Shown one piece after another: positions 20,041 to 53,440 of a DNA stretch of 64,000 nt (the stretch's first letter is position 1; each line of letters begins with the position of its first letter). The translations under genes were made by a program, and so were the position numbers. The stretch covers positions 124,001 through 188,000 of the IMG/VR virus record IMGVR_UViG_3300030616_000016, one strand, 5' to 3'. The notes beneath the pieces are model-generated. The model did no database searches, was not told the origin of the DNA, and saw nothing but the letters and a program-made list of their open reading frames with translations.

Positions 20041-22332
20041 TTAGAGGACGACCTTCTGGCCGACCATATTGAGAACTGCTTCTTCTTTGCTGACATACCA
20101 GCCAGCCTGCTTGCCGTCCTTGTGCAGCTCCACACTGTACCAGTCGGACTTACGATAAATCCGTTCTGGCTTAGCATGCACTTCCAGTTCTACTCCTTGC
20201 AGGTCACTTACTTGACCCTTGAATCCCCTCACGTCAATAAATCCATCAGGCACATAGGACTCATCAACATCAACAGCAAAGCGTGACTGGATATCACCAA
20301 TATACCTACCAAGAATGGTGATAAAGAACGTATTGCGCGTTCTAACTCCTTCATCGTTCCACCATTTCACTTTACCCTTGTCAGGCTTCTCTGACCAGGC
20401 GATGCGCATCATAGACCCGATGACATCGAGAGGGTTGTCCAGCGCTTCAACATAATCCAAGATCTCATCAGTAAGTGCTCTGAACTCATTTCTGATTTCT
20501 TTATCCTTGTCATCCGAAGTTAGCTCAGGGTCTTTCTTGATCTCGATTACATTTCTGATGGTATTGGACCTGGATTCCCATATAAACGCCCAGAGATCTT
20601 CTCCTTCTGGAGTGATATCAAACGCGTTTACATCGAACGGTGGCTTGGCCTCCATGTTTGTATCAGTGTATTTGGCCAGCTCAAGCTCATCCTGAATCTT
20701 GTCGAAGCCATTCAGGAACTTTGTCAGCTTGCATTTCTCAGCCATTTCGTAGGCCAGAAGCTTTTTAGGGAAAACTTCCGGCTTGCCATACTTATCAATC
20801 AATTTGTAGCCATATGCGACCAGATCTTTCTCGTCTTTCGATACTGGTCTGTTATCAATGACCTTGTGTTTGATATAACCAAGATCCTTGATCAACTTTG
20901 GATCGTCAAACCCATTGGTCAAAGACAGGCACTGTTGCACAAGATCAACACCGCCAATTGTGAGACCAGAATGAATGTCGATAAGCTGATGTGCAAGCTC
21001 GCGCAAGGCTTCATTCTTTGGTTTCGACAAGTCGATCTCCAGCTTCATTGGATCTTCATCGTCCAATGTTCTTTCTGGAGTCTGAGAGATATCCTGAGTC
21101 CATGAGAATGGCTTATGTTTATTTCCGTTCTCGTCTATCACAGTTAGGCCCATGACTTCAGAACTAGAGCCTATTGGTACTCTGAATGCCGCAGCTCCAC
21201 ATTCGACATACTCAGGATCGATGCCCCATATTTTCTTGAGCATCTCTGCGTTACGCGCTTTCATCTCCTCTGTGATTACGTGGAGTGTAAGTGTGTCTCC
21301 ATCACAGTCCGATGAAGTCCATCGCTCTATATTATCTATGGTCTTCTTGCTTGCAAGACCAAGGGTATACTTGTGCGTTCCAACAACCAACGCCATAAAG
21401 TCTTTCTTGCATCCTGTGAACTTTATGTTGCGCTCGTCCACCACAATGGTATTTGGCGGCAGGGTCTCATCACATATCATCATACCCTTGATGCCTTTGC
21501 CTTCATGGGCCATAGCAACACCAATCGCCATGATTTCATCATCGGAAGACTCAAGCTTGAGCTCATTTTCTTCTAGAGTCTCAGCGTCTTCTCTCCAGGC
21601 AATTGGATATGATCCGAATGCTGTTGCATACTGATTCTTCTTGTACGGCGCATCCATAAGCCTGTTCATCTCCTTATTGAACTCATAGAAGGCCACTGCG
21701 TCGTCGACTGATATCTCGAATGGGAAATGAGCCAGATTCTTGGCTACCCATTCTGGCGTGAGCCGCATATTGTCTATCTTATGCGCCCACTCGCATGTTG
21801 AAAGAACGTATGCTTTATTGAACTCGTTCTTTGTCTCTGCGGAAAGGTCGCTGCCGTAAATAGCCGTTGGATACTGCATCGGCAGCATAGACTGCTTCTG
21901 CTTATTTAAGGTTGTCCTTGCCGCTTCCTTTTTTACCTTCTTCCATACGTCTTTGCTTCCATGAATCAACCCATCTACGGTTCTAGCAATGATGACGTTG
22001 ATCGTCTTGCTATCCCAGTACGCTAACCTCCTGAGACTTTCATTAAGCATCCAAAGTATCCTTCTAAGATGCTTAACTCTTATGCGACCATCAACCATCG
22101 CCTGAGATGACTCAAACCACTTAGGTTGAGTCTTAAGGCCGAGATTATTATCGGGAACAAGGTCCCATTTGACCATATTCCAGACGATATCGTTAATGAC
22201 TTTTTCTCTGAGGCCTTTTTCTCTGCCTCTACCCACTGTCTTAGTCGACAATGACACAGGGAAATCTGCAGGCATGTCTGTCCTGCCAAGATCTCCTGCA
22301 TAGACTGTTTTGCTGCTTAACTTACACTTCAT
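20041..22332 (-). CDS. Candidate single-subunit two-barrel RNA polymerase (YonO / cellular-RdRP / crAss-like superfamily)
   Basis: GIKGMMICDETLPPNTIVVDERNIKF (K282) resembles the GxKG...I...KF segment of cellular RdRP-like enzymes. SSDCDGDTLTLH (D342-D346, nt 21309-21295) matches the DxDGD Mg-binding loop. Confidence 0.55.
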   Translation of the reverse strand: MKCKLSSKTVYAGDLGRTDMPADFPVSLSTKTVGRGREKGLREKVINDIVWNMVKWDLVPDNNLGLKTQPKWFESSQAMVDGRIRVKHLRRILWMLNESLRRLAYWDSKTINVIIARTVDGLIHGSKDVWKKVKKEAARTTLNKQKQSMLPMQYPTAIYGSDLSAETKNEFNKAYVLSTCEWAHKIDNMRLTPEWVAKNLAHFPFEISVDDAVAFYEFNKEMNRLMDAPYKKNQYATAFGSYPIAWREDAETLEENELKLESSDDEIMAIGVAMAHEGKGIKGMMICDETLPPNTIVVDERNIKFTGCKKDFMALVVGTHKYTLGLASKKTIDNIERWTSSDCDGDTLTLHVITEEMKARNAEMLKKIWGIDPEYVECGAAAFRVPIGSSSEVMGLTVIDENGNKHKPFSWTQDISQTPERTLDDEDPMKLEIDLSKPKNEALRELAHQLIDIHSGLTIGGVDLVQQCLSLTNGFDDPKLIKDLGYIKHKVIDNRPVSKDEKDLVAYGYKLIDKYGKPEVFPKKLLAYEMAEKCKLTKFLNGFDKIQDELELAKYTDTNMEAKPPFDVNAFDITPEGEDLWAFIWESRSNTIRNVIEIKKDPELTSDDKDKEIRNEFRALTDEILDYVEALDNPLDVIGSMMRIAWSEKPDKGKVKWWNDEGVRTRNTFFITILGRYIGDIQSRFAVDVDESYVPDGFIDVRGFKGQVSDLQGVELEVHAKPERIYRKSDWYSVELHKDGKQAGWYVSKEEAVLNMVGQKVVL

Positions 22333-22368
22333 ACTAATTCTCCTTAAAAGGGTGGTCTTGTTATAAGA

Positions 22369-22406
22369 GACAGGCTATATAGCGACCACTAACCATATAG
22401 CCTGTC
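22369..22406. other. 12-bp hairpin upstream of the RNAP-like gene
   Basis: GACAGGCTATAT / ATATAGCCTGTC with a 14-nt loop. Confidence 0.7.
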
Positions 22407-22419
22407 ATTGAATTAAGAT

Positions 22420-22722
22420 CTAGCGTCCGAGGCGCTTCCTCAGACTATTGATCTCGTTCTTGGCCTTACCGATGTCCTTGCCGAGATCCTTAATGATCTC
22501 AACGTACTGGTCGATGAACTCCTTGGTCTCTTCGCTATAAACCTCGAAGTTTCTGACAAACTCCTGATGGTGTTTGCGCTCCCTCTGCATCTGGCGCAAG
22601 TCCTTCTCCTTTTTCTGGAGCTCTTCCTCCAACTTGAGCACGGTCTTAGCCATGCTCTGATTTTTGTTATCCATGCTGCTTATGATCGCTTCTTTGAACT
22701 GAGCCATGTCTCCCAATTTCAT
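22420..22722 (-). CDS. Coiled-coil protein (start MKLGDM)
   Basis: GGAGAG SD; heptads. Confidence 0.65.
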   Translation of the reverse strand: MKLGDMAQFKEAIISSMDNKNQSMAKTVLKLEEELQKKEKDLRQMQRERKHHQEFVRNFEVYSEETKEFIDQYVEIIKDLGKDIGKAKNEINSLRKRLGR

Positions 22723-22846
22723 ATCTAACTCTCCTTCTGCCCTATTGGGCAATAGCGTATATAGAAGGCCCTATATAGGCCCTTGCCTATATAAGGGGTA
22801 GTACATATACGCCCTATGTACTACCTGTTTACACTGCATATAAGGT

Positions 22847-23002
22847 CTACCTATTAGACCTTGTTGTATAAGTACCCACATTACCCTTAATAAGGGCTTC
22901 TACACCATACCCAATAGTGTCGGACTTACGCGCATAGTGTTTATTGAGCACGCGCATATTGTGCTCATCAACAATCCTCTTAATCTGTTCTGCTCTACTC
23001 AT
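22847..23002 (-). CDS. 51-aa protein (below ORF-track cutoff)
   Basis: MSRAEQIKRIVDEHNMRVLNKHYARKSDTIGYGVEALIKGNVGTYTTRSNR*; AAGGAG SD. Confidence 0.55.
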   Translation of the reverse strand: MSRAEQIKRIVDEHNMRVLNKHYARKSDTIGYGVEALIKGNVGTYTTRSNR

Positions 23003-23012
23003 AATACTCTCC

Positions 23013-23132
23013 TTAATTACTATGGATTAACGGATATACGTACTCCAGTAGTACGTATAGGAATATGCACGCACATATTCCAAACAGTAGTCCCTTACAT
23101 ACTTCCTTGAGCCACTCCTTTGGCTTGTTCAC
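23013..23132 (-). CDS. 39-aa single-TM protein (start GTG 23132)
   Basis: AAGGAGGTG SD; hydrophobic core. Confidence 0.55.
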   Translation of the reverse strand: MNKPKEWLKEVCKGLLFGICACIFLYVLLEYVYPLIHSN

Positions 23133-23143
23133 TATACACCTCC

Positions 23144-23341
23144 TTAGATAAATGTTCCTGCTGTGTTGCACACCCACTGCAGGGCAACAATTGCCCCAAA
23201 CAGCATAGCACCAACCCATGCTATCCTTTCTACGTATGCATGAATATCATCTATCACACTGCTGCCCCACTCACAATTCATTACGAACGTGCACAATACA
23301 CCTATGCACAGACACACCACAAACGCTATTATATACTCCAT
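23144..23341 (-). CDS. Two-TM membrane protein (start MEYIIAF)
   Basis: GGAGGTG SD; two hydrophobic segments. Confidence 0.6.
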   Translation of the reverse strand: MEYIIAFVVCLCIGVLCTFVMNCEWGSSVIDDIHAYVERIAWVGAMLFGAIVALQWVCNTAGTFI

Positions 23342-23516
23342 ATCACACCTCCATATAAGCACTATTAATATATACTAATGAGCAACACACCCATTAGTAC
23401 TGATGATACAGTGCTATATATCACCATTCACTATATAGACCGCCTTATATAAGGAAGCCTATATAGTAAAGGTATACTATTTATATATGCGCCATATACC
23501 AGGGCGCTCATACATA

Positions 23517-23846
23517 TCACATATACACTGTTGTTTCTGGTTTATTGTGCTTGGTAAATTCATTCATCCCACCAAGCACCCTCCTTATCTGTCTGTTTGT
23601 ACCATTGCTAATCACCAGGTATACATATGACTCATGGTAGAAATCACCGTCGTAATCGTCAATAATTCTTACCTTGTACTCAACTACACGCCCGTTGCAC
23701 CATATACATCTCTGATACACATGTTCCAAGGAAGGTATATCTCTTACTACATCACCAACCACCAACCCCGTGGAGCTGTCAAAAAACTTACCTTCTACTG
23801 CTACATTGTTGCTATCTTTCACTGCATTAAGATTTGTGATCAACAT
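23517..23846 (-). CDS. Hypothetical protein, first gene of the leftward unit
   Basis: AGGAG SD. Confidence 0.6.
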   Translation of the reverse strand: MLITNLNAVKDSNNVAVEGKFFDSSTGLVVGDVVRDIPSLEHVYQRCIWCNGRVVEYKVRIIDDYDGDFYHESYVYLVISNGTNRQIRRVLGGMNEFTKHNKPETTVYM

Positions 23847-23956
23847 AATGATCTCCTTTGCCCATCGGGCTAAAAGTTTTTATTTTCTTTCTCTATAAGC
23901 ACCCCGGTACCGTGCATCGACCAATGCACATCATAAGTACCGAGAAATATCAACCA

Positions 23957-24062
23957 TCATCCACCCTTGTGTCTTACAAATCTTCCACCCTTAAGACCTT
24001 ATATTTTCTTCCACTCTTGTGTTTCATGAATTATCCACCCTTGAAAATTATATATATAATAT
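23957..24062. repeat. Four 12-bp direct repeats resembling DnaA boxes/iterons, followed by an AT tract
   Basis: TCATCCACCCTT 23957, TCTTCCACCCTT 23981, TCTTCCACTCTT 24007, TTATCCACCCTT 24031, then AAAATTATATATATAATAT. Confidence 0.8.
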
Positions 24063-24329
24063 GCACATAGTGCTGCTGCAGCGTGTCAACAAGAGCTTGA
24101 CGGCAAGCCCGCCCCTCTTAAAAATAACACTCCAAGACGCCGCCGCCCCATTACATAAAAATGCAACCTAGTAGCTGAGCTACTGTTCATCATAGATAAA
24201 CTTCAAGAAAGACCCCCCGGTACCGCATATATACACTCCCGCATAACAACCTATTCATGCCCCCAAAAATATATATAATATACACTTCACACTCCCTGAG
24301 TGTTATTCTTGAATATTTTATTATTACAA

Positions 24330-24357
24330 TTGAATTCATAACCAATTATGCTATAAT
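24330..24357 (+). promoter_or_regulatory. Sigma70/sigmaA-type promoter with extended -10
   Basis: TTGAAT-N16-TATAAT with TG at -15/-14 (TGCTATAAT). Confidence 0.7.
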
Positions 24358-24391
24358 TACTACTGATTGATTTAACAGGAGGAATACAATA

Positions 24392-24949
24392 TTGGCTTGT
24401 TTATATATAGAAGCAGGAGCAAACAGAGGTAGGTCAGCAAAGCGGTTTTATAAGCAACACAAAGACATTAACTTCGAGTATCACCTTTTTGAGGCTAATC
24501 CTAATATCATTGCAGACCTTAACAGTTCAGTGGTATGTATTCAAGGCGAGCGCACTATTTATAACAAAGCCGTATGGACTGAAAATGATATTGAAATGGA
24601 AATCAAGATAGATAAGACGACCAAGGGGTCAACTATCTGTGAGAAGAGTGTTAGAGTGAATGAGACGGCGGTTACGTCCACAATAGACTTTGATGAATGG
24701 TTCAGGGCCTGTTGTAAAGAAGATGATTATATTGTCCTTGTTATTGATATAGAAGGCGCGGAATATGAAGTTCTTCCAAAGATGATTGATAACGGGTGCT
24801 TTGACATGGTAGACGAGCTTACAATCGAATTTCATGGTCATAAAATGAAGAATAAAAAATTCACATCCGATATGAATAAATTGTTTAGGGATTATTTTAA
24901 TACAATGAAGTTCAATAAGTGCGAATTGTATTTTATAGACAAAATTTGA
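24392..24949 (+). CDS. FkbM-family SAM-dependent methyltransferase
   Basis: YIEAGANRG, LFEANP, KAVW, LVIDIEGAEYEVL, ELTIEFH; AGGAGG SD, TTG start. Confidence 0.8.
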   Translation: MACLYIEAGANRGRSAKRFYKQHKDINFEYHLFEANPNIIADLNSSVVCIQGERTIYNKAVWTENDIEMEIKIDKTTKGSTICEKSVRVNETAVTSTIDFDEWFRACCKEDDYIVLVIDIEGAEYEVLPKMIDNGCFDMVDELTIEFHGHKMKNKKFTSDMNKLFRDYFNTMKFNKCELYFIDKI

Positions 24950-25324: not shown

Positions 25325-25518
25325 AAGATAAAACAGCAGACATATTCAGGCTTTTATGGTCAAACAACGATGATATAGCCAGGCTTCTTAGAGCCCACCG
25401 CCCCGATCTTCTTAACAGAGCACGTAAGAAGCCCACAAGCAGAGACTGTGAAGACTACATCACTTTATGCAAGGAAATAGCAGAGGCTGATATTCCTGGA
25501 TTGGATGAAATATTATGA
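25321..25518 (+). CDS. Hypothetical protein
   Basis: ATGA-coupled at both ends. Confidence 0.55.
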   Translation: MKDKTADIFRLLWSNNDDIARLLRAHRPDLLNRARKKPTSRDCEDYITLCKEIAEADIPGLDEIL

Positions 25519-26354
25519 AGAAATTTAATATGCAGGGCGCGCTTTATAAATCAGACAAAAATCCTGAAGAGATTAAAAAGGAGATATGTAAGAACAAACC
25601 GGCAGAAGAAGAATCCAAGCCTATAGAAATGATCGAAGTAGACAACAGCAGCGAGCTTCCCAAGGAACTCGCGCCGCTTCAATCACTCGTAGATAAAATA
25701 AGCCCTGATCGAACAGTAACTTTACCAGCTGAAACCTGGAAAACACTTGCTAAGTGGGCTGTGAAAGCACGGAAAGGAGCCTCCAGAGAAGCGCCCATGC
25801 TTTGCACAAGCGAGCAATGCCCATACGCTAAACAATGCCCTCTCATTAAATCCGGCGTTAATATTGAACCATTTACAGAATGTCCTCTTGAAAGCTACCT
25901 CATGGAAGAATGGGATGAGGATATGGCCGCCAGTATTGCAGATAAACCTGGCGATAAACTTTACGCTCCAGATCTGCGCACTATTTCTCATTCAACACTT
26001 CTTGAAATCCTTATGAGAAGAACAACCATGGAACTAGCTAATGATCCAGAGGTTGTAAAAGAAGTGGTTATTGGTATAGACGAAGAAGGTAAGCCAGTCA
26101 AAGCAGAGAAGCTTAATGATAAAATAACCGCCGTCCAAAATATGATCAAAACAGAAGAGAAACTTCACGACTCTCTTCTCGCCACAAGAAAAGCAAGAGC
26201 TGCTGCAGGTGATAAACTTTCAGGCGATTCTGAAGATTATATAGAGGGCGCCGCTTCTTTTGCTGAAACAGAGGTAGCTGATGAACAACCAGACAAGAAA
26301 CGTGATGAACATTCTGAAGCGGATGGGGATACTGAAGGATCCGCCGGGTCTTAA
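25515..26354 (+). CDS. Cys-cluster protein, candidate small terminase subunit
   Basis: CTSEQCPYAKQCP...CP cluster, helical C-terminus and acidic tail, upstream of TerL; function inferred from position. Confidence 0.45.
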   Translation: MKKFNMQGALYKSDKNPEEIKKEICKNKPAEEESKPIEMIEVDNSSELPKELAPLQSLVDKISPDRTVTLPAETWKTLAKWAVKARKGASREAPMLCTSEQCPYAKQCPLIKSGVNIEPFTECPLESYLMEEWDEDMAASIADKPGDKLYAPDLRTISHSTLLEILMRRTTMELANDPEVVKEVVIGIDEEGKPVKAEKLNDKITAVQNMIKTEEKLHDSLLATRKARAAAGDKLSGDSEDYIEGAASFAETEVADEQPDKKRDEHSEADGDTEGSAGS

Positions 26355-29300
26355 ACCAAGCAAGCTTGAGAATTACGGTATAGGCCTTGTTTCAGAGGGA
26401 ATTCACAGCACAATAAATCCGCACGATCTTAAAACCCCTTTCTCCACATTCCATGTTGGTTCAGGGTACAAAGGGATAGAGTTTGATAATGTTATCAAAG
26501 CTGTCCGTATGGGTACTTATCTTGACCTTGAAACCAGAGGCCTGGATCCAAGAAAGGATCCTCCTTGGCTGGGCGCCATAGTAAGCCCAGGCGTTTCAGA
26601 GCTCAGCGAAGAGGCATATCTTGAAACCATAGGTACTCCCCTATTCAGACAAAAGCTTGATGCCGAAGGGCGTGTAGATTATGATTATCTCTCTGAAAAG
26701 CTATTCAACATAAAACCATCCCGTCCAATATTACAACCAGGCTTATCTGAAGAGGATGCCATTAAGCAGGTTATAGACAGCATGGGTCAAAGAATCAAGC
26801 CCATGGTGTATGAAGGGCGTCCTGTAGACCTCCTGAAAAGTGAAACGTTGCGGCAATTTTTGAAAACTGCCCCTGAGGCAATTAGGAACGGGACGCCTGC
26901 GCAACAAATAGCCGCGTATTTTGATCCACAACTAAATCCTTCCAATAGAGCCCTAAATGAGTTTATGCATGGTGGGGAAGGTATTTTTACTCAGGCTTCA
27001 AAAGATGTGCTTGCTATGACTGGCCAGAAAATGAGCGCTGGTGACATTGACAGAATAAGAAAGAACCTTATGAATGAGCTTCACACCGGCAAGGGATTGA
27101 ATTGGGATGACTGGTTGAAGCAGTCTTTTGATGCAGCGGATCAATCAGGCAAGACAATAATCGTTCACAACCTTCAGTTTGAATCTAGAATGGCAGCCGG
27201 CCGAACCAGCCAAACTTTCTATAACGAACTGAAAGAACGATACTTGCATTCATACAGCCAGGCCAAATCAAAATCAGACGATATATTCACGCAAAGAATA
27301 TACACTACTTCCACCGCTCTTCACAATGCCAAGTTCGAAGCGATGAGAAATTGGTCTAATGATGCCTGGGGTAATGTTTTTGATGAGTGGGCAAGGCATG
27401 CTGATCTAAAGACAAATAAGGTGAAGGTTCTTGACAGTATGGATCTTGGTCGTTCCGTGTTTGGTATGGCGCAGGAACAGCTTGGAAGAAAAGGTTTATA
27501 TAAGTGGCGTAATACACAGAGCATGGCTGGTTTAAGCTTGTCTCACTATGCAGACGCTCTTACCAGATACCACGAATCAATAGGCGATCCTCTTCCTGAT
27601 TTCCTTCGGAAGGAGCTTCACAGATCACGCGCTGATGCTCTTCTTACAGAATCATATGTAGAAGACATGCTTCAGATAGGCAGGCTGCTTAGAGAAGGTA
27701 GAGGTGGCGAGCTTAATCTTGAAAGAAATAATAGATATAGAATGATATTGGAGAGATTGGGTGAGATTAATGCCGACCCTATGACTCGACTTAATGCTGC
27801 TAGAAAGCAAGCTCTCCAGGAATTTGGTACTATTATTGGTGGTGATGAGGTAGAGATTAGAGATTGGGATCCAGATAGACCTAGAGGTCCATATCATGAA
27901 GTTACTACCATGGAGTGGGTTCCTGACGACACCAGGGAAGGTGGCTCTTTCAAACGTATGAATAGGAAGGTAAGTGATTATAAGAGAAGAAAAACAAATA
28001 GGATGGAAGAGGTCGTAGATTACCACATCAAAGGTTTTAACAAGAATCTTCGTAAAGATCTTACAGATAAGCAGATACAAAGATTTAGAGAATCTCTACT
28101 TAGTGCCGGTAGGCAGATGAAGCAGGCTTACCACACTAGGAAGCCTGGAGCTGTACAGAAGGTAGCAGAACAGCTTGAGCAGGTAGATGCCTTTAATATG
28201 GATAAGGCATTCTCTCCGGATCAAGCGAAGAGGTTTATTGGAGATATAGAGCGCAAGACATTTGCTAAGGCTACATCTCATCAGTTGGGTATGACTGGTA
28301 AGATAGGGTGGCTTACTGCAGGTATGATGGGTGGCGCTGTGCTTATGAAGTCCATGATGGGCTCTGAGGCAGAGCACTATATGAACCAGATGTATTCGAA
28401 GTACACGAAGTATGAGCAAGATCAGGGTGTATTTGAACAGGTAGATGTTCTTGCTTCGATGGGCGCAGGAGCTTTTGGTGGAGCTGTATTAGCTTCTTCT
28501 TTTGGTCCAGGAATGGAAATGACCCTGTCCAAAAGTGCTCATGAGATGATGAAGCTTAAGAATGTTGGAAGGAATTTGCCTTATATGGCAGCTGCCGGCT
28601 TAGCCTTAACATCAACACTTTATTCTCTCAAGAGTAATGTTTCTGATGTAGTTGATGCCGAGCCTACAGAAGGACATCCCTTCCAGATGGGTAGTGCGTT
28701 TCTTGGGGCGGCTGCTATGACAGGAATGGCCTATGGTCAAAGATATGGCTTTGCTCAAGACGCATTTGCAAAAAGACTGGAAGGCGAACCAAGAGCGATA
28801 GACAAACTTGCTAATCTGACTGGCCTTAGACATGGATCCGATATGCTTAGCGGTGTATCTGATCTTGTACTTCACGGCGGACGCACAGCAAGCCCAAAGA
28901 TGGACTGGGCCAGGTCCAGTATTATAGACCCCGTCACAACCAAAATCAAATCCGTTACTTCCAGCAAAGGCTTCCAATCAGTAATGGATACAATGGGTAG
29001 ATATAAGATACCGGGAGTTATTGCAGCTGGTGTTGGTATGATGTTTGGAGCCGACTATCTTTTTGGTCAGGAAGACAACGTTATTCCAGCTCAGCATATT
29101 GACAATATGGAAATAGAGGGTATGGGCGAATATGGATATTCAGGTCCTATGCGCAAGGCCAATACTCCATTTGGATCCAGAAACAATCCAGCAAAAATTA
29201 TCAAAGATGCCTGGGGTCAATTCAATGTCAGCGCGGCCAGGGCCAAACCACAAAATTACTACGCTCCTCATATTATTGAAGAGCTATACAACGTAAGCAA

Positions 29301-29973
29301 GCATAAAGATCTTATTAAGATGGATATAGCTGCTCACATGAGCGTCAAACAAGCAGAGGTTGGTGCAGACTTTGTTGATGGTTCTTATAAGAAGTGGATG
29401 GATAATACCAGCAAGACAAATCCATTAGCTCTTGAAATGACATATTTACATGACGTCGGTCTTTCTGTTCCTCAGAAAAAGGTCGACTATGGTATTAATA
29501 GCTATATGCCTGTTGGAGATATGGGTCATAGATTTGGTCCTTTTACTGCAGAAGTACCTGAGTTCGAGATGCAACTTCCTCGCGGGAAGAAAATGATTGA
29601 CCCAGATCTTTTTGAAACAAAAGGGCCTAATGGTAATATCACAAGGGTTACTGAAGCGCATCTTGCCAATGCTTCGAATGCAAATAAAAATGCGCAAGTT
29701 ACTGCAAAATATAAAGATGCAGGCAGAAGAGCTGTCAATATGGAGAACGCAAGACCTGGAGATCATCTTGGCGCACAAAACATGATGCACACAGTTCCAA
29801 GAAGAAATCCGCCAATAAATTCTAAAAGAGGTCTTGAAAGACAAGTACTTAGCGTTATAATGGATAAGGACCATGCCATCAAATCCAATATACAGGGTTA
29901 TGGCGTAAGACACTCTCGCAGAAGACCCAGAATGAGAGCGAATAGGTCTAATGGACATTTGACTGGAGTATGA
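26281..29973 (+). CDS. 1230-aa protein: DEDDh (DnaQ-like) exonuclease domain fused to Gly/Ala/Met-rich membrane-like segments
   Basis: ExoI YLDLETRGL (26518), ExoII IIVHNLQFE (27166), VLDSMDL, ExoIII HRSRAD (27619); several hydrophobic segments after residue ~670. Confidence 0.7.
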   Translation: MNNQTRNVMNILKRMGILKDPPGLKPSKLENYGIGLVSEGIHSTINPHDLKTPFSTFHVGSGYKGIEFDNVIKAVRMGTYLDLETRGLDPRKDPPWLGAIVSPGVSELSEEAYLETIGTPLFRQKLDAEGRVDYDYLSEKLFNIKPSRPILQPGLSEEDAIKQVIDSMGQRIKPMVYEGRPVDLLKSETLRQFLKTAPEAIRNGTPAQQIAAYFDPQLNPSNRALNEFMHGGEGIFTQASKDVLAMTGQKMSAGDIDRIRKNLMNELHTGKGLNWDDWLKQSFDAADQSGKTIIVHNLQFESRMAAGRTSQTFYNELKERYLHSYSQAKSKSDDIFTQRIYTTSTALHNAKFEAMRNWSNDAWGNVFDEWARHADLKTNKVKVLDSMDLGRSVFGMAQEQLGRKGLYKWRNTQSMAGLSLSHYADALTRYHESIGDPLPDFLRKELHRSRADALLTESYVEDMLQIGRLLREGRGGELNLERNNRYRMILERLGEINADPMTRLNAARKQALQEFGTIIGGDEVEIRDWDPDRPRGPYHEVTTMEWVPDDTREGGSFKRMNRKVSDYKRRKTNRMEEVVDYHIKGFNKNLRKDLTDKQIQRFRESLLSAGRQMKQAYHTRKPGAVQKVAEQLEQVDAFNMDKAFSPDQAKRFIGDIERKTFAKATSHQLGMTGKIGWLTAGMMGGAVLMKSMMGSEAEHYMNQMYSKYTKYEQDQGVFEQVDVLASMGAGAFGGAVLASSFGPGMEMTLSKSAHEMMKLKNVGRNLPYMAAAGLALTSTLYSLKSNVSDVVDAEPTEGHPFQMGSAFLGAAAMTGMAYGQRYGFAQDAFAKRLEGEPRAIDKLANLTGLRHGSDMLSGVSDLVLHGGRTASPKMDWARSSIIDPVTTKIKSVTSSKGFQSVMDTMGRYKIPGVIAAGVGMMFGADYLFGQEDNVIPAQHIDNMEIEGMGEYGYSGPMRKANTPFGSRNNPAKIIKDAWGQFNVSAARAKPQNYYAPHIIEELYNVSKHKDLIKMDIAAHMSVKQAEVGADFVDGSYKKWMDNTSKTNPLALEMTYLHDVGLSVPQKKVDYGINSYMPVGDMGHRFGPFTAEVPEFEMQLPRGKKMIDPDLFETKGPNGNITRVTEAHLANASNANKNAQVTAKYKDAGRRAVNMENARPGDHLGAQNMMHTVPRRNPPINSKRGLERQVLSVIMDKDHAIKSNIQGYGVRHSRRRPRMRANRSNGHLTGV

Positions 29974-29974
29974 T

Positions 29975-30751
29975 ATGCCCGGTTTTGATTGGCAACAAGG
30001 CACATTTATGACTGAAGGTAGCAATCCTGTCACCGGGTTTATGCTCGATTATGTCACACAGGACGTTGTTAGAGACATCGGTGTAATTGGTGCAAGAGTT
30101 CCATTCGGCATAGGCTACAAAGGAGCTTATACTGGCCTAAGTGGGTTCTGGACAGGTAAGGGTGCTGAAGCAGCGGGCAGATTTCTTGGTCAAAACGTAG
30201 ACAGGTTTGGAGCTGAGTCTGCTGCTAGATATCTTGGACAACGTGGCGTTCTTGCTCAATTCTTCGAAAAGTCTATAGCAGGGATGGGTGGCGAAGCTTT
30301 CTGGGAGGTTGCTCCTAAGCTTGGCGAGAAAGGAGCTACGGGAGTTGCAGAATATGCGTCAGCCAGAGCAGCAGCCAAGATTGGTCGTGGTGTACTAAAT
30401 CCATGGAACCTTCTTACTGGTAGGACTCAAAAACTAGCCGCAGAGGTTGGATGGGGTAGAGTAGGTCTTCTAGCTGGTTCTACAGCTATGCGCGGACTCA
30501 TGCATATGACAATGAGTCGTGGCGCTGTTGGTTTCAATATAGGATTCAGTGCTCACCAAGGATTCATGAATTCCATGATAGAGAAGGGTCGTCAAGAAAT
30601 AACTAGTATGACAAGAGTAGACATGGCCCCGGCATTCTATGATACAAGTCAAGCAGCTACAATGAGACAAGCTGCTGTTCAGGAAATACAAAATACACAA
30701 TTAAACCTTAGAAGTGCATTTGGCCAAGAAGCCGCCGCATTTCATAGATAG
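29975..30751 (+). CDS. Gly/Ala-rich probable virion (ejection/internal) protein
   Basis: Composition and position in the late operon; ends TMRQAAVQEIQNTQLNLRSAFGQEAAAFHR. Confidence 0.55.
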   Translation: MPGFDWQQGTFMTEGSNPVTGFMLDYVTQDVVRDIGVIGARVPFGIGYKGAYTGLSGFWTGKGAEAAGRFLGQNVDRFGAESAARYLGQRGVLAQFFEKSIAGMGGEAFWEVAPKLGEKGATGVAEYASARAAAKIGRGVLNPWNLLTGRTQKLAAEVGWGRVGLLAGSTAMRGLMHMTMSRGAVGFNIGFSAHQGFMNSMIEKGRQEITSMTRVDMAPAFYDTSQAATMRQAAVQEIQNTQLNLRSAFGQEAAAFHR

Positions 30752-30763
30752 GAGGATTGTATC

Positions 30764-31333
30764 ATGCCAAGAGTTGGTAGTTTTATGAGCGGGTTAAGCG
30801 CCGCAACAGAAATGGGGCTTGGTAAAGCATTTAGCTCCAACTTGAGAACTGTTAGGAGTGGAATGCAGAGTGTTACCAATGGTGCTACGATGCGTGACTT
30901 AATGACATTTAGAAAAGGTATAGGCACTGCCGCGAAAGTTGGTGCTGGTTTCATGGGTGTTAGCGCTGCAGCTAATTTGTTTGACCAACAAAGCACTATG
31001 GTCAGTGGAGTTGCCTTACCTGCTGCAACTGCATATGCTTTATATAGAGGTAGTGGATTTAAATCACTCAGAGGAATTGGACCCAAAGGAGCTGGAAGAT
31101 TCAGTAGTGCTGGCGCTAGAGGCGGTATGGCTATGGGAGAAATGCTGGCAGAATTTGGCGCTAAGGGTGGTTCGTCTGGCTCTAGAGGCGGTATGGCTAT
31201 GGGAGAAATGCTGGCAGAAGCAGTTACACAGCTGCCGCCAGCAATCAAAAAACCACTCAGCACTGCAGCTACTAAGATTATGGAAGGTAATAGAATGAAA
31301 ATTATAAGAGCTAGAAGAAGATTTGGAGTTTGA
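30764..31333 (+). CDS. Gly/Ala-rich probable virion protein with internal 38-bp duplication
   Basis: RGGMAMGEMLAE twice (31116-31153, 31182-31219). Confidence 0.55.
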   Translation: MPRVGSFMSGLSAATEMGLGKAFSSNLRTVRSGMQSVTNGATMRDLMTFRKGIGTAAKVGAGFMGVSAAANLFDQQSTMVSGVALPAATAYALYRGSGFKSLRGIGPKGAGRFSSAGARGGMAMGEMLAEFGAKGGSSGSRGGMAMGEMLAEAVTQLPPAIKKPLSTAATKIMEGNRMKIIRARRRFGV

Positions 31334-31339
31334 TTTAAC

Positions 31340-31720
31340 ATGGCAAAATTAGCCAATGCTTTACATAACACAGTATATCCATTCGCCGTAGGCGCTGCTG
31401 GTCTTGCTGTCGGAGGCCTAGCCGGTGCTTATACTGGAATAACCACAGAAGATGCAGACATGCGCACTCGTGGCATGCTTGGAGCTGGTACAGCAGCTGC
31501 TATGGGCACTGGTGCTACTGGCGGCGCATTGATTGGCGCTGGTATAGGCTTGGCAAAGTATGGAGGGCGTGGAATAAAAGCCGGGTCTATTGCTGGTGGT
31601 CTCATTGGCGCGGCTCTTTCACATGGAATAACGAAGTCCGCCACTCAATATCATAGACCTCCCAAAAGACCAATTCCTTCCGACAATATGACTGGCCGTA
31701 TTAACGGACTTAACCGATGA
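31340..31720 (+). CDS. Gly-zipper hydrophobic protein
   Basis: GAAGLAVGGLAG and GGALIGAGIG segments. Confidence 0.55.
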   Translation: MAKLANALHNTVYPFAVGAAGLAVGGLAGAYTGITTEDADMRTRGMLGAGTAAAMGTGATGGALIGAGIGLAKYGGRGIKAGSIAGGLIGAALSHGITKSATQYHRPPKRPIPSDNMTGRINGLNR

Positions 31721-31775: not shown

Positions 31776-34700
31776 GTGCAGATTGAAAGACCCGACCCCT
31801 ATTCTTCGGATATGTGTAAAGAATGCAAAGCGATGTACAGAAAGCTGTATGATGAAGGTAAGATAAAGAACCCATTTCCTCCTTTGTGTCGTGGAGATAG
31901 AAGACTACAAGAAGGATATATATGTGATGGCATGTCTCCTCAAGAGAAAGCCTTAGCTGTTTTATCTAATCCTTCTACATGGGCTAAATATGAACTCAAC
32001 ATAGCACCCAGGTGGTATCAGGAGACCATGCTCGCATGCTCTGCCAGACAGACAGTACTGCGATGCGGTAGACGTATAGGAAAGAGTTTTATGTTGGTAT
32101 TAAGAGCTCTTCACAACATGTCTAGAAATAAACACTATCGCGTTCTTATTGTTGCTCCATACCAGAACCAAATCAATATTCTTTTTGGTTTTATAGACAA
32201 GTTTATTTCTGATTCTAAAACCATAAAGAACAAAGTTAAAAGAAGGGTTAAATCTCCTCAACTTCTTGAATTAACCAATGGCTCATTGATACAAGGCTTT
32301 CCATCAGGTATTAACTCTGGCGGTAAGAGTGATAAGGTTCGTGGTCAAGATGCCGATGAGATTCTTATTGACGAGATTGACTATCTGCCAGACGGAGATA
32401 TCGACGCTATTGTTGCTATTCTGGCTTCAAATAAAAACACCAAGATATCAGTTTCATCTACTCCTAGTGGTAGAAAAACCAAGTATTATAAATTCTGCAC
32501 TCACAAGCAAGACGGATGGAAAGAATGGCACTTCTCTTCCATGGTTTCTCCAGAGTGGACAGAGCAGACCGAGAACATGCTACGAGGTATGTATTCAACT
32601 CTGGCATGGGAACACGAAATATGTTTGAGCGGCGATACTTTAGTAAGAACTACGCTTGCAGATAAAAAAATAAAAGACATTACCTGCGAAGATTTTGTAT
32701 ATGATAGTAACTTTAATATAGTCGAAGTTGCTAAGGGCGCCACTTATACTGGTAGGAAACAAGTTGTGAAATACACTTTACCCAATGACAGACATATAGT
32801 TTCTACACCAGACCATAGCTTTCCTAATAGGAGTTTTACCAAAACACCCATTGAAAGCCTTGATGAATTACCAGTGTATAGAGATAAAAGATATAATTCG
32901 TCTGACAGAGATGTGGTTTTAGCTAGACTTGTTGGGTACAACTTGGGCGATGGATCTTGTTGTTCGACTAGATATCAGTCAAGTTTCTACTCATCATCTT
33001 ATTCTGATATGGACAAAATAGTTAAAGACTTACATACTATTTATCCTGGCTATAAAGGGAACGTTTTGGAAGATGTTATTAATAACTCAAACAAAAAAGC
33101 CTCACTAGTTCATGTCGACGGCAAAAGATGCTCTGTTAATGTTAGTAAAAAAATTACATTGGATTTAATAAGTCATGGCGTCGTAAGAGGTAAAAAGGTA
33201 GAACAAGAATTTAATATACCAGATTTTATTGCAAGTTCCAATGATTTAGAGGTTAAGAGAGAATTTATTGCTGCTTTGTTTGGAGCGGAAGGATCTATGC
33301 CAGCTAAGGCATGCGACGACGGATATATGCCGCACACTTTATCTTTATCTATGTCTAAGCGGCGTGGGGTGTCTGCAGATGTGTTTTTTGATGGGTTGGT
33401 GAGTATATTAAAAGAATTTGGCGTAAGATCTACATGGACTTCGCATCCAGCACAATTCAAATCTGCTAATAATGGTATATGTCATAACACTGTCTATGCG
33501 CTTTATGTTCATAATAGCTTTGATAATATTTATGCTTTTTTGAATAAGGTAGGCTATAGATATTGCGATGCAAAAGAACAAGCTGCGTTTAATATTAAAT
33601 GCTATCTTGAGTGCTATGATTATGCCTTAAAAGCCAAGAGGAATCGATTTGAGTATGCTCGAATATTAAAAGATAAGAAGTTGAGTCATAAAGAAATAAG
33701 CAAGAGAACGCGCTTAAGTCTTGCGCAAATCAGCAAAGCTATTGCGGGTCGCATTCCAAAGAGATTTTATAATGAATTTCCCAAATTGGATGACTGGCTG
33801 AAGTATAATGTCGTTGGCTCCGGTGTATTCATGCCAATAGTAAAACGCAGAAAATTACCTAAGCCTATTGATGTATACAATATAACAGTTGGATCACACG
33901 ACCATTCATACATATTGGGGAACGATACAAGGACTTTTAATTGCGCAGAATTTGGCCAGTTTGAAGAAGGTGCCTTTCCAACCAAAAAGCTTGTTGAAAG
34001 CATGCAGTCTTATACATATGCTCAATGTTCCAGGAAGCCAAATTGCATTTATTCAATGGGCGTTGACTGGAATGAGCATCCAATTGGCGTTCATATGGTT
34101 GTTGTTGAATATGATCCTGAATATGGCCAGTTTAAAGTTGTAGACAAAAAGATATCTAACGACAAGGAATTTACTCAAACTAAAGCAGTAGAAGACATCA
34201 TTACAACATATAGAACGTGGATGCCAGATTGGCTATGGGCTGATGCCGGCGCCGGTGGATATCAAATTGAAACTTTGAAGAGAGTTGCAAACGCTAAACC
34301 TGATCTTAGATTAAGAAAGAAGATACGTGGTGTGGTTATGCATGAGAAAGAGATAATCAAAGATCCTATAACAAAGCGTGATGTAAAGAAACAGGCGAAG
34401 GCATTGATGGTTGATTTATGTGTGCGACGAGTAGAGATTGGTCAGTGTATATTTCCAAGAATTGAAGATGATGAAAACATGTTAGTAGACCAAATCAGAA
34501 ACTTCAAGGTAGAGAGGTTTACTCCTAATGGTATTCCTGTCTACTCTCAGGGCAAAGACCATACTGCAGTTGCATGGATGGTCGCTATGTATGCCATACT
34601 TCTTAATCGCACGGATATTAAGAATGTCAAACATTGCAAGAATGTTGGTTCTGTTCCAATATACAATTCCATTACAGGAGCATCGACCACAACAAGATCC

Positions 34701-34877
34701 AGATCAATATCAAATGAGATTATAGGCTCAAGAGAAATTAAGACCAAACAGGATGTTCAGATAGAGAGTTTTCGTAAAGTATCGCAACCACAAAGAAGAA
34801 AGCACGTAGCTCATATTGAATTAAGACGCGGCGTTGTTTCATCAAAGCGTGCTATCGCAAACAGATCAAGGATATAA
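31776..34877 (+). CDS. terL: Terminase large subunit (with intein)
   Basis: Walker A CGRRIGKS, Walker B ILIDEID, SSTPSG, nuclease MGVDWN and GKDH; spliced length 593 aa. Confidence 0.95.
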   Translation: MQIERPDPYSSDMCKECKAMYRKLYDEGKIKNPFPPLCRGDRRLQEGYICDGMSPQEKALAVLSNPSTWAKYELNIAPRWYQETMLACSARQTVLRCGRRIGKSFMLVLRALHNMSRNKHYRVLIVAPYQNQINILFGFIDKFISDSKTIKNKVKRRVKSPQLLELTNGSLIQGFPSGINSGGKSDKVRGQDADEILIDEIDYLPDGDIDAIVAILASNKNTKISVSSTPSGRKTKYYKFCTHKQDGWKEWHFSSMVSPEWTEQTENMLRGMYSTLAWEHEICLSGDTLVRTTLADKKIKDITCEDFVYDSNFNIVEVAKGATYTGRKQVVKYTLPNDRHIVSTPDHSFPNRSFTKTPIESLDELPVYRDKRYNSSDRDVVLARLVGYNLGDGSCCSTRYQSSFYSSSYSDMDKIVKDLHTIYPGYKGNVLEDVINNSNKKASLVHVDGKRCSVNVSKKITLDLISHGVVRGKKVEQEFNIPDFIASSNDLEVKREFIAALFGAEGSMPAKACDDGYMPHTLSLSMSKRRGVSADVFFDGLVSILKEFGVRSTWTSHPAQFKSANNGICHNTVYALYVHNSFDNIYAFLNKVGYRYCDAKEQAAFNIKCYLECYDYALKAKRNRFEYARILKDKKLSHKEISKRTRLSLAQISKAIAGRIPKRFYNEFPKLDDWLKYNVVGSGVFMPIVKRRKLPKPIDVYNITVGSHDHSYILGNDTRTFNCAEFGQFEEGAFPTKKLVESMQSYTYAQCSRKPNCIYSMGVDWNEHPIGVHMVVVEYDPEYGQFKVVDKKISNDKEFTQTKAVEDIITTYRTWMPDWLWADAGAGGYQIETLKRVANAKPDLRLRKKIRGVVMHEKEIIKDPITKRDVKKQAKALMVDLCVRRVEIGQCIFPRIEDDENMLVDQIRNFKVERFTPNGIPVYSQGKDHTAVAWMVAMYAILLNRTDIKNVKHCKNVGSVPIYNSITGASTTTRSRSISNEIIGSREIKTKQDVQIESFRKVSQPQRRKHVAHIELRRGVVSSKRAIANRSRI
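32622..33941 (+). mobile_element. 440-aa intein with LAGLIDADG endonuclease in TerL
   Basis: HEI|CLSGDT, block B STPDH, LVGYNLGDGS and FIAALFGAEGS, ends TRTFN|C. Confidence 0.9.
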
Positions 34878-34878
34878 T

Positions 34879-52675: not shown

Positions 52676-53440
52676 ATGGGAGAATTATGCGAGGCCTATC
52701 TAGGTCCAGAATATCTTCCAGGTCCTCTTATATCGGGTGAATATTTAAAAGGTGAGGTGGCAGAAGATCCAATTTTGTCACCTCATCTTGCACCTTATAT
52801 CGCCGCTCTATTAAAGAAGTACGACGATATATTTCATGTTAAGTATAATGATCAGGATTTTATAATCCGGCCATTGACTTCAAATGAATATAAGATACTG
52901 TGTAAGCTTAGGTTATACTTCGATCCTCAATTAGGGTTCGAAAAGACAAGGCCTAGGTTTAGTGTTGTAAGCCTAGAAGATATATTTATAGACTGTATTC
53001 TTTATCCTGAGAATGTACTTGATATGGATTTAGATGCATATGTTGTTGATATGCTTATAGAGACTGCAATACAATATTCGGGATGGGATTCACAGGAGGA
53101 TATATTTGTAACAAAAGCTCAAATGCAAGCTCATGTAACATCAGATCTATTAGAGGGCATGTTTACATTTATTAGACGAGCACACCCAGGTCTTGGTGAT
53201 CGCGATCTTGAAAACAAGAATATTATTGATATAATGAAGTTAATAGCAAGTGCTGAATTGATATTGGATAAGCCATTCGAGATAGTCACCAAAGATGATA
53301 AATCAGATGCTTCTAAAATATCAACCGAAGTTATGATCAAAGAAGACTTGGCAGGTCTTAATAAGCTTAATATGCAAGGCTTAAATAAGCCGGAGCTAGA
53401 ATATGCCCGTAACGCCCAGAGAAGAACAGGAAAGAAGTAG
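52676..53440 (+). CDS. Second tail assembly chaperone
   Basis: KKYDDIF...FIIRPLT...CILYP...LIETAIQYSGW, a similar pattern; has its own GAGGA SD. Confidence 0.65.
   Translation: MGELCEAYLGPEYLPGPLISGEYLKGEVAEDPILSPHLAPYIAALLKKYDDIFHVKYNDQDFIIRPLTSNEYKILCKLRLYFDPQLGFEKTRPRFSVVSLEDIFIDCILYPENVLDMDLDAYVVDMLIETAIQYSGWDSQEDIFVTKAQMQAHVTSDLLEGMFTFIRRAHPGLGDRDLENKNIIDIMKLIASAELILDKPFEIVTKDDKSDASKISTEVMIKEDLAGLNKLNMQGLNKPELEYARNAQRRTGKK

What the first reader, a model, noticed from the sequence alone, without database searches (positions are those of the whole stretch)
26281..29973. DEDDh exonuclease fused to ejection-protein-like segments in the late operon
Seen: a complete but insertion-stretched ExoI-II-III set in the first ~460 aa (ExoII has Glu in HNLQFE), then repeated Gly/Ala/Met hydrophobic stretches like those of the neighbouring and tail-associated proteins. 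Inference: a virion-carried nuclease/proofreader delivered with the DNA (genome-end processing, host-DNA attack, or degradation of immune oligonucleotides) rather than a replication enzyme.
Basis: partly seen in the sequence, partly recalled or inferred. Interest (0 to 1): 0.6.

Follow-up and report, generated by a model that had tools for sequence, protein, structure and literature searches.

The report
Divergent exonuclease giant in phage head module
A marine-sediment jumbo phage encodes, just upstream of its DNA-packaging genes, a 1230-residue protein that starts with a highly divergent 3'-5' exonuclease domain and continues with weakly hydrophobic Gly/Ala-rich helices; it belongs to a rare, undescribed family that is probably packed into the virion, though that is not shown.

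Summary
Window 26281-29973 (+) is one 1230-aa ORF. Its residues ~68-475 carry ExoI (D82-x-E84-T-x-G), ExoII (H296-N-x-x-F-E301) and ExoIII (H447-x4-D452). These residues are invariant across ten relatives at 21-62% identity. An AlphaFold model (pLDDT 77) matches only DnaQ-like exonucleases in the top 50 of a Foldseek-independent PDB search (Z up to 10). Pfam, PHROGs and PDB sequence searches find nothing, so this is a very divergent "DEEDh" subfamily with three large insertions. Residues ~666-930 hold five weakly hydrophobic Gly/Ala/Met helices, followed by a conserved ~25-aa motif and a basic tail. The gene order (Cys-rich ~270-aa protein, this gene, Gly/Ala/Met-rich small proteins, large terminase, portal) is conserved in seven divergent large-phage contigs. 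In Bacillus phage 0305phi8-36 the small proteins occupying that slot were found in virions by mass spectrometry. Two relatives add staphylococcal-nuclease and kinase-like domains. Acinetobacter phage ME3 has an unfused 529-aa version. Packaging into the virion and delivery with the DNA is the best reading (about 0.55) but is untested. Attack on cyclic oligonucleotides is unlikely, because this enzyme class needs a free 3' end.

The parts
26281..29973 (+). Whole ORF, 1230 aa (P0001). The database copy starts at M9, and relatives align from M15.
26281..26478 (+). N-terminal ~66 residues. They are predicted disordered and include a degenerate copy of the family motif (res 38-66, ending GSGYKG).
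   Evidence: pLDDT below 50 for res 15-64; motif copies
26482..27705 (+). DnaQ-like (DEEDh) 3'-5' exonuclease domain, res ~68-475, with three large insertions (about 102-290, 305-380 and 403-445).
   Evidence: AF2 model; VIA-align top 50 all DEDD exonucleases, Z 6.6-10; Atlas RNase_T/ExoI clusters
26518..26544 (+). ExoI motif, Y80-L88 (D82, E84), on predicted strand 79-85.
27166..27183 (+). ExoII motif, H296-E301, with Glu301 in place of Asp. hhalign places it on HNAAFD of E. coli epsilon.
27433..27444 (+). D385-S-M-D388, at the end of strand 381-385. Both Asp are invariant in alignment A3.
27619..27636 (+). ExoIII motif, H447-x4-D452 (the 'h' type), at the start of helix 449-471.
27706..28275 (+). 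Charged helical linker, res ~476-665.
28276..29070 (+). Block of five weakly hydrophobic Gly/Ala/Met-rich helices, res ~666-930. A comparable block is present in all family members except P0009, which has one such segment.
   Evidence: the AF2 model of this part was unreliable
29104..29178 (+). Conserved family motif E-G-x-G-x-x-G-Y-S-x-x-x-R-K-x-x-T-P-F-G-S, res 942-966.
   Evidence: unique in the genome
29179..29973 (+). Variable basic C-terminal region ending in the conserved ...S-N-G-H-L-T-G-V, plus the stop codon.
25515..26354 (+). Upstream partner gene (P0015, 279 aa, four-Cys motif, acidic tail). It overlaps the target's start, is a homologue of 0305phi8-36 gp112, and lies directly upstream in every relative.
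29975..31720 (+). Three small proteins with 33-43% Gly+Ala+Met (P0012, P0013, P0014) between the target and the large terminase. The C-terminus of P0012 matches 0305phi8-36 gp115, and the neighbouring gp113, gp114 and gp116 are virion proteins by mass spectrometry.
31776..34877 (+). Large terminase (intein-containing). It marks the packaging/head module.

Best explanation
The ORF encodes a giant modular protein of a rare family confined to large 0305phi8-36-like myoviruses. Shown: residues ~68-475 form a DnaQ-like fold that keeps the full five-residue catalytic set, as a DEEDh variant with Glu at ExoII. The domain is stretched by three insertions and too divergent for Pfam or PHROGs. Inferred: the domain is an active, metal-dependent 3'-5' exonuclease (about 0.8). 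Also inferred: the protein is made with the head and packaging genes, is packed into the capsid together with the neighbouring Gly/Ala/Met-rich small proteins, and leaves the virion with the DNA (about 0.55). Its five weakly hydrophobic Gly/Ala helices would let it stay soluble in the capsid and insert into the host membrane at entry. The exonuclease would then sit at the cytoplasmic face, where nucleic-acid 3' ends are available from the first moment of infection. The most likely substrates are linear DNA or RNA 3' ends. These could be host or defence-made nucleic acids, as suggested by relatives that add a staphylococcal-type endonuclease to the same chain. Alternatively they could be the phage's own terminally redundant ends, resected for annealing. 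The conserved ~25-aa motif that flanks modules may be a processing or docking site.
For: Fold: AF2 model with pLDDT 77.4 and pTM 0.79. All 50 best rows of the Foldseek-independent PDB search are DEDD exonucleases. Examples are a DNA polymerase entry 9qpc (Z 10.0), 9mrc (9.8), epsilon 1j53 (9.6, 163 of 174 residues aligned), ExoI, TREX1, RNase T, Cap18, Cas2-DEDDh, Pan2, REXO2 and T4 DexA. The ESM Atlas search returns RNase_T/ExoI clusters. Catalytic residues are invariant in ten sequences down to 21% identity and present in phage ME3 ME3_11. Family member P0009 hits phrog_192 'DNA polymerase exonuclease subunit' at 7.8e-5. The motif set is not a chance finding. Glu at ExoII has a documented active precedent, the DEEDh ExoN of coronavirus nsp14 (PMC7654266). 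Context: the same gene order next to the large terminase and portal holds in L002, the P0004 contig, L004, L005, L006/L007 and L011 and in ME3. In 0305phi8-36, gp113, gp114 and gp116 in the corresponding slot are virion proteins by mass spectrometry, and P0015 matches gp112 and P0012 matches gp115. Relatives P0009 and P0010 carry SNase and kinase-like domains in the same chain. Such multi-effector chains next to virion genes are the signature of packaged 'polyvalent' proteins (PMC5512222).
Against: There is no proteomic, expression or biochemical evidence for any family member. The only lineage member with virion mass spectrometry, 0305phi8-36, lacks the gene. The same module also encodes non-virion proteins such as terminase, protease/scaffold and chaperones. 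The gene sits at the boundary between undetected gp112-like and detected gp113-like proteins. The hydrophobic helices are below the usual threshold for constitutive membrane helices, and their Gly-zipper spacing is explained by composition. The C-terminal half could not be modelled (pLDDT 36). Foldseek alone gave no significant PDB match, and sequence searches against Pfam and PDB are blank.
Confidence: 0.5

Rival explanations
1. A non-virion, membrane-associated exonuclease. It is made in the infected cell with the packaging genes and acts there, for example by trimming or maturing concatemer or terminal-repeat ends for packaging, degrading host DNA, or destroying DNA of superinfecting phages at the membrane.
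For: The gene is tightly coupled (overlapping or abutting) to the gp112-like Cys-rich protein in every genome. That protein was not detected in 0305phi8-36 virions and could be a packaging factor. The gene lies four genes upstream of the large terminase. Hydrophobic helices could anchor it in the cell membrane.
Against: Known terminases need no separate exonuclease. The fusion with Gly/Ala/Met-rich segments resembles the composition of adjacent virion proteins. The SNase- and kinase-bearing giant relatives of up to 2085 aa look like delivered effectors rather than assembly factors.
Confidence: 0.25
2. A structural or DNA-end-binding internal protein whose exonuclease-like domain no longer cuts. 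It would act as a pseudo-enzyme that grips or caps the genome end in the capsid, in the manner of an end protector or pilot protein.
For: DEDD folds have been recruited for non-catalytic roles; the Exuperantia EXO-like domain is among the matches. ExoII carries Glu rather than Asp. Large insertions could occlude the active site.
Against: All five catalytic positions are invariant across very divergent members, which is not expected after loss of catalysis. Glu at ExoII is compatible with activity in nsp14 (PMC7654266).
Confidence: 0.12
3. A trans-acting proofreading subunit for the phage's DnaE-type polymerase.
For: The genome encodes a Pol III alpha homologue. It has no match at all to Pfam RNase_T (epsilon-type) at E <= 10. 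This is the only DEDDh-like protein found in it.
Against: The gene lies about 85 kb from the polymerase gene, inside the head module. It is fused to about 750 residues of linker, hydrophobic helices and basic tail. 0305phi8-36, which reportedly also encodes a DNA polymerase III (PMC2147016), has no homologue. Relatives fuse it to SNase and kinase-like domains.
Confidence: 0.05

Closest known systems
DnaQ-like DEDDh 3'-5' exonucleases (E. coli Pol III epsilon, exonuclease I, RNase T, TREX1, T4 DexA)
   Same: Same fold by structure search, Z 8-10 with near-complete coverage of the small enzymes. Same order of ExoI, ExoII and ExoIII motifs, and the His-type ExoIII.
   Different: No sequence-level detection by Pfam RNase_T, PHROGs or PDB. 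About 230 extra residues lie in three insertions. ExoII carries Glu. The domain is fused to about 750 non-enzymatic residues and is encoded in a head module.
Coronavirus nsp14 ExoN (DEEDh variant)
   Same: Glu at the ExoII acid position within an otherwise DEDDh site (PMC7654266). MERS nsp14 appears among the structural matches (rank 47).
   Different: Only the fold and this substitution are shared. nsp14 has zinc fingers, needs nsp10 and works in RNA proofreading.
Polyvalent virion-packaged proteins of phages (Iyer, Burroughs, Anand, de Souza and Aravind 2017, PMC5512222)
   Same: Giant multi-domain chains encoded next to portal, terminase and virion genes. Relatives of the window protein combine two nucleases and a kinase-like domain.
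   Different: The paper's text mentions no DnaQ-like exonuclease or staphylococcal nuclease among its domains. No MuF, portal-fused or metallopeptidase domain was detected here. The window protein itself has only one recognisable enzyme domain.
Bacillus phage 0305phi8-36 gp112-gp116 block
   Same: Homologous gene block upstream of the large terminase: P0015 matches gp112 (3e-8) and the P0012 C-terminus matches gp115 (1e-5). The block holds Gly/Ala/Met-rich small proteins, three of them detected in virions by mass spectrometry.
   Different: 0305phi8-36 has no exonuclease gene in this block or elsewhere.
Acinetobacter phage vB_AbaM_ME3 ME3_11 (hypothetical protein, 529 aa)
   Same: A family member in a cultured phage: profile E 1.4e-9, all three Exo motifs present, and the same slot between the gp112-like gene and the large terminase.
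   Different: It is unfused, with the exonuclease, a linker and a single hydrophobic segment. A separate 546-aa Gly-rich 'putative membrane protein', ME3_12, follows. ME3_12 has no detectable similarity to the window protein's C-terminal half.
Ejection proteins of podoviruses (T7 gp14-16, P22 gp7/16/20, N4 ejection proteins)
   Same: A large internal-protein-like chain with membrane-active-looking helices, possibly carrying an enzyme, as T7 gp16 carries a transglycosylase and N4 carries its virion RNA polymerase (own knowledge; PMC8954989 listed).
   Different: No homology was detected. The host phage is a contractile-tailed myovirus with its own tape measure.

Membership tests
DnaQ-like DEDDh exonuclease superfamily | ExoI D-x-E on the first beta strand | tested here: met
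   D82 and E84 are invariant in 10 sequences and lie on predicted strand 79-85.
DnaQ-like DEDDh exonuclease superfamily | ExoII acidic residue in N-x-x-F-D | tested here: met
   N297, F300 and E301 are invariant. The acid is Glu, not Asp, in every member. It aligns to D103 of epsilon in a non-significant hhalign match. The Glu variant is known to be active in nsp14.
DnaQ-like DEDDh exonuclease superfamily | ExoIII H-x4-D (the 'h' subtype) | tested here: met
   H447 and D452 are invariant.
DnaQ-like DEDDh exonuclease superfamily | RNase H-like/DnaQ fold | tested here: met
   All top 50 VIA-align rows are DEDD exonucleases, Z up to 10.0. Atlas returns RNase_T clusters. Foldseek alone was not significant.
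DnaQ-like DEDDh exonuclease superfamily | Match to Pfam RNase_T (PF00929) above its cut-off | tested here: not met
   No hit for the protein or anywhere in the genome. Only relative P0009 reaches phrog_192, at 7.8e-5. Membership is therefore at superfamily level, as a new subfamily.
DnaQ-like DEDDh exonuclease superfamily | Metal-dependent 3'-5' exonuclease activity | not testable with these tools
   Needs an enzyme assay.
Polyvalent virion-packaged proteins (PMC5512222) | Two or more effector domains in one polypeptide | tested here: inconclusive
   The window protein has one recognisable enzyme domain. Relatives P0009 and P0010 add SNase and kinase-like domains.
Polyvalent virion-packaged proteins (PMC5512222) | Encoded among late/virion genes with portal and terminase | tested here: met
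Polyvalent virion-packaged proteins (PMC5512222) | Physical presence in the virion and delivery into the host | not testable with these tools
   Indirect evidence only: neighbouring homologues in 0305phi8-36 are virion proteins by mass spectrometry.
Polyvalent virion-packaged proteins (PMC5512222) | MuF, portal-fusion or processing metallopeptidase domain | tested here: not met
   No such Pfam or PHROG hit.
Podovirus ejection proteins (T7 gp14-16 type) | Sequence homology to known ejection proteins | tested here: not met
   No PHROG or Pfam hit. The low-confidence C-terminal model was not used for a fold search.
Replicative proofreader (epsilon type) | Genomic or physical association with the replicative polymerase | tested here: not met
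   The polymerase gene is at G000 65 kb and this gene is at 150 kb, inside the head module. Binding was not tested.

The most novel reading that the evidence does not exclude
The family is a new class of pilot-effector polyproteins in large myoviruses. In this reading it is packaged in the capsid and processed or docked at a previously undescribed ~25-aa delimiter motif (E-G-L...R-K-x-x-T-D-F-G-S-G-Y). Its Gly/Ala helices build or join the membrane conduit, and a DEEDh exonuclease rides in with the leading DNA end. The exonuclease would either resect the terminal repeats to start recombination-dependent circularisation or destroy host nucleic-acid 3' ends before any phage gene is expressed.
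Probability: 0.15. Interest if true: 0.8.

Novelty: new variant of a known kind. Interest (0 to 1): 0.55.

Why it matters
Several enzymes are known to be carried in phage virions, including RNA polymerases, ADP-ribosyltransferases, transglycosylases and ParB- or BECR-type nucleases. The literature searched here describes no DnaQ-type 3'-5' exonuclease in that role. If this family is packaged, it adds a new activity to the set of proteins present at time zero of infection. It would also give a testable case of how jumbo myoviruses prepare or protect their DNA ends, or attack host nucleic acids, before transcription starts. The domain is also a useful example of a catalytic fold that Pfam, PHROGs and Foldseek all miss but that motif conservation plus an exhaustive structure alignment recover. 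The ME3 homologue makes the question experimentally accessible.

Tried and rejected
Negative or uninformative searches:
- Pfam and PHROG scans of the whole protein and of its parts gave nothing.
- PDB sequence searches with the protein, the family profile and the short relative P0009 gave no significant exonuclease hit. Weak troponin-C matches to an insertion (E about 0.01) were judged spurious, and PolC-type and 'exodeoxyribonuclease III' entries appeared only at E 0.2-2 over ExoI.
- Foldseek against PDB had no significant row.
- The word search with the N-terminal domain alone and with the ten-sequence profile found no shorter relatives.
- megablast and tblastn of P0001, P0007 and P0010 against 50,697 phage records found nothing.
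- An IMG/VR scan added only one locus.
- The language-model look-alike search of the C-terminal half gave only unnamed viral clusters at chance-level scores.

Failed or rejected analyses:
- AF2 of residues 640-1000 failed (pLDDT 36), so nothing is claimed about that fold.
- hhalign against E. coli epsilon aligned only ExoII and was not significant.
- A profile hit in the 0305phi8-36 tape measure (12 bits) was rejected as noise.
- A shared targeting motif among virion proteins was rejected, because the F-G-S motif is unique to this ORF in the genome.
- Paralogy with neighbouring or tail proteins was rejected.
- Glycine-zipper periodicity beyond composition was rejected.
- Promoter and terminator scans were at background level.

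Not done:
- No RNA run holds the sequence, so timing of expression could not be examined.

Full report
WHAT IS THERE

Window 26281-29973 (+) is a single ORF of 1230 codons. Its ATG is preceded by GAGG at a six-base spacing. The window is part of a 231,647-bp IMG/VR virus record that is about 95% complete. Near-identical DNA occurs in marine-sediment metagenomes from two studies.

The + strand block that starts near 24.4 kb encodes, in order:
- an FkbM-type methyltransferase;
- a small membrane protein;
- a 279-aa Cys-rich protein (P0015);
- the target;
- three small proteins with 33-43% Gly+Ala+Met;
- the large terminase;
- an 829-aa protein;
- the portal, a protease/scaffold-like protein and the major capsid protein;
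- sheath, tube and tail chaperones;
- two proteins of about 1800 aa that correspond to gp145 and the tape measure of Bacillus phage 0305phi8-36.

The capsid protein is 31% identical to that of 0305phi8-36, the nearest cultured phage. The element is therefore a jumbo contractile-tailed phage of that lineage, and the target lies in its head/packaging module.

THE EXONUCLEASE DOMAIN

Family libraries and sequence searches are blank:
- Pfam and PHROGs find nothing.
- PDB sequence searches find nothing.
- Pfam RNase_T finds nothing anywhere in the genome.

Relatives are few. The word search found only two full-length relatives, at 54% and 36% identity. An exhaustive HMMER search of 1.84 billion representatives with a profile of the N-terminal domain found only seven more distant proteins of 921-2085 aa.

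In the ten-sequence alignment, identity to the window protein falls to 21-27%. The invariant columns are almost exactly the catalytic motifs: D82, E84, T85, G87; N297, F300, E301; D385, D388; E445, H447, D452. A composite pattern of the three motifs hits this ORF alone in the genome, none of 20,000 shuffles, and all eleven family members.

Structure evidence agrees:
- An AlphaFold model of residues 1-520 built on that alignment has pLDDT 77 and pTM 0.79. ExoI lies on a strand (79-85), ExoII lies at a strand-helix junction (292-307), and ExoIII lies at the start of a long helix.
- Foldseek gave no significant PDB match.
- The Foldseek-independent alignment against 48,161 PDB representatives returned DEDD exonucleases in all 50 listed rows. 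Z ranged from 10.0 to 6.6, and the small enzymes were almost fully covered, for example 163 of 174 residues of Pol III epsilon.
- The ESM Atlas search returned RNase_T/exonuclease I clusters and, first, an unnamed viral cluster of 557-aa proteins.
- Family member P0009, which has shorter insertions, reaches phrog_192 'DNA polymerase exonuclease subunit' at 7.8e-5.

I therefore take the DnaQ-like fold as established (about 0.95) and catalytic competence as likely (about 0.8). The Glu at ExoII is fixed in the whole family. It has an active precedent in the DEEDh site of coronavirus nsp14 (PMC7654266).

THE REST OF THE PROTEIN

After a charged helical linker come five Gly/Ala/Met-rich segments with Kyte-Doolittle values of 1.0-1.5. 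This is below the usual value for constitutive membrane helices. Comparable blocks occur in nearly all relatives. The small-xxx-small spacing is four times denser here than elsewhere in the protein, but no denser than composition predicts.

A ~25-aa motif follows (E-G-x-G-x-x-G-Y-S-x-x-x-R-K-x-x-T-P-F-G-S, residues 942-966). The same motif occurs once in P0007, P0008, P0009 and P0011. It occurs four times in the 2085-aa P0010, each time between domain-sized stretches. A degenerate copy precedes the exonuclease domain in P0001, P0003, P0004, P0005 and P0006. It occurs nowhere else in the genome. Its role is unexplained. A processing or docking site is my guess.

The C-terminal half could not be modelled (pLDDT 36). 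It has no paralogue in the genome.

CONTEXT AND RELATIVES

The gene order is conserved: a ~270-aa Cys-rich protein that overlaps or abuts the exonuclease gene, then three to five small proteins, the large terminase, a ~800-aa protein and the portal. This order holds in every relative whose contig could be read. These contigs range from 14 to 199 kb.

In 0305phi8-36:
- gp112 is the homologue of the Cys-rich protein (3e-8).
- gp115 shares its C-terminus with P0012 (1e-5).
- gp113-gp115 are 31-36% Gly+Ala+Met, and gp116 is 23%.
- gp113, gp114 and gp116 are annotated as virion proteins identified by mass spectrometry.
- The phage has no exonuclease homologue, by tblastn or by profile.

Relatives P0009 and P0010 add a staphylococcal-nuclease domain, and P0009 also adds a kinase-like domain.

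A profile search of cultured relatives found one member: ME3_11 of Acinetobacter phage vB_AbaM_ME3 (E 1.4e-9). It has all three motifs, is 529 aa long, lies in the same slot, and ends in a single hydrophobic segment. A separate 546-aa Gly-rich 'putative membrane protein' follows it. ME3 thus looks like the unfused state of the window's fusion, although ME3_12 has no detectable similarity to the window protein's C-terminal half. No virion proteomics of ME3 was found.

HOW IT MOST LIKELY WORKS

Shown: a conserved, catalytically complete DEEDh domain is fused to a conserved block of weakly hydrophobic helices and is encoded inside the head/packaging module.

Inferred: the protein is made with the head proteins, packed into the capsid with the neighbouring Gly/Ala/Met-rich proteins, and released with the DNA. 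Its helices then associate with the host membrane, and the exonuclease acts on free 3' ends at the entry site.

Three observations support this reading:
- the mass-spectrometry status of the neighbouring homologues;
- the multi-nuclease, multi-domain relatives, which fit the 'polyvalent protein' theme of packaged effectors (PMC5512222);
- the composition shared with other virion proteins.

I put packaging at about 0.55 and the whole chain of inference at about 0.5. Cyclic oligonucleotides are not, because DEDD enzymes need a 3'-OH end (established enzymology).

The rivals are:
- an intracellular membrane-associated nuclease linked to packaging or exclusion (0.25);
- a non-catalytic end-binding internal protein (0.12);
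- a trans proofreader for the DnaE-type polymerase (0.05). The polymerase gene is 85 kb away.

COMPARISON AND NOVELTY

At superfamily level the domain is a DEDDh exonuclease. It fails the Pfam RNase_T model, so it should be filed as a new, insertion-rich DEEDh subfamily. The polyvalent-protein paper lists ParB-like DNases, RadC and BECR RNases but mentions no DnaQ-like exonuclease or staphylococcal nuclease. Literature searches combining virion or ejection terms with DEDDh, DnaQ or exonuclease returned nothing relevant.

The family is rare: nine representatives at E <= 0.001 among 1.84 billion cluster representatives, plus the window's own protein. I rate it a new variant of a known kind, with interest 0.55. 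The fold assignment is solid. The biology (packaging, substrate, motif) is open but directly testable in phage ME3.

LIMITS

- No expression or read-level data were used. No RNA run holds the sequence, and read laying was not called.
- No alternative genetic code was needed.

Noticed in passing
window 31776-34877 (intein about 32622-33941): The large terminase is 1033 aa, against 590 aa in the 70%-identical relative on L002. The extra ~440 residues (C283 to N722, followed by C723) interrupt the protein exactly as an intein would.
   Followed up: partly
window 37320-40316 (intein about 38379-39413): The portal is 998 aa, against 651 aa on L002. The extra ~345 residues (C354 to N698, followed by T699) carry a LAGLIDADG domain, so the portal gene also holds a homing-endonuclease intein.
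   Followed up: partly
window 53403-58841: The 1812-aa gp145-like virion protein has a weak Intein_splicing hit at residues 782-1077. This may be a third intein in a structural gene.
   Followed up: no
window 29104-29178 and 26392-26478; P0010 around residues 715-745, 1280-1310, 1513-1543 and 1756-1786: A ~25-aa motif (E-G-L/M ... R-K/R-x-x-T-D/P-F-G-S-G-Y/W) flanks modules in all members of the exonuclease family. It occurs four times in the 2085-aa relative and nowhere else in this genome. Its function is unknown.
   Followed up: partly
L013 5895-7484 and 7495-9135 (Acinetobacter phage vB_AbaM_ME3, KU935715.1): ME3_11, annotated as hypothetical, is an unfused member of the exonuclease family in a cultured phage. 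ME3_12, a Gly-rich 'putative membrane protein', follows it, so the fusion in the window is split there.
   Followed up: partly
window 25515-26354: A 279-aa protein with a four-Cys motif and an acidic tail overlaps the target's start by 74 nt. It is a homologue of 0305phi8-36 gp112 and always lies directly upstream of the exonuclease gene. It may be a packaging factor (small terminase?).
   Followed up: partly
window 30764-31333: The 189-aa protein (40% Gly+Ala+Met) contains a tandem repeat of the peptide R-G-G-M-A-M-G-E-M-L-A-E.
   Followed up: no
window 34834-37323: An 829-aa protein with several hydrophobic segments lies between the large terminase and the portal. It is conserved in size (786-815 aa) and position in three relatives and has no family hit.
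   Followed up: no
window about 22300-24400: The coding strand switches here from - to +, with a matching change of sign in GC and AT skew near 24 kb. A sigma-70-like promoter with an extended -10 lies at 24330-24357, in front of the first + strand gene, an FkbM-type methyltransferase.
   Followed up: no
P0010 (L006 10001-16258): The 2085-aa relative combines the exonuclease, a staphylococcal nuclease, four motif copies and further unassigned modules, including an H-E-x-x-E-x-x-H-like stretch. It is a candidate multi-effector polyprotein.
   Followed up: no
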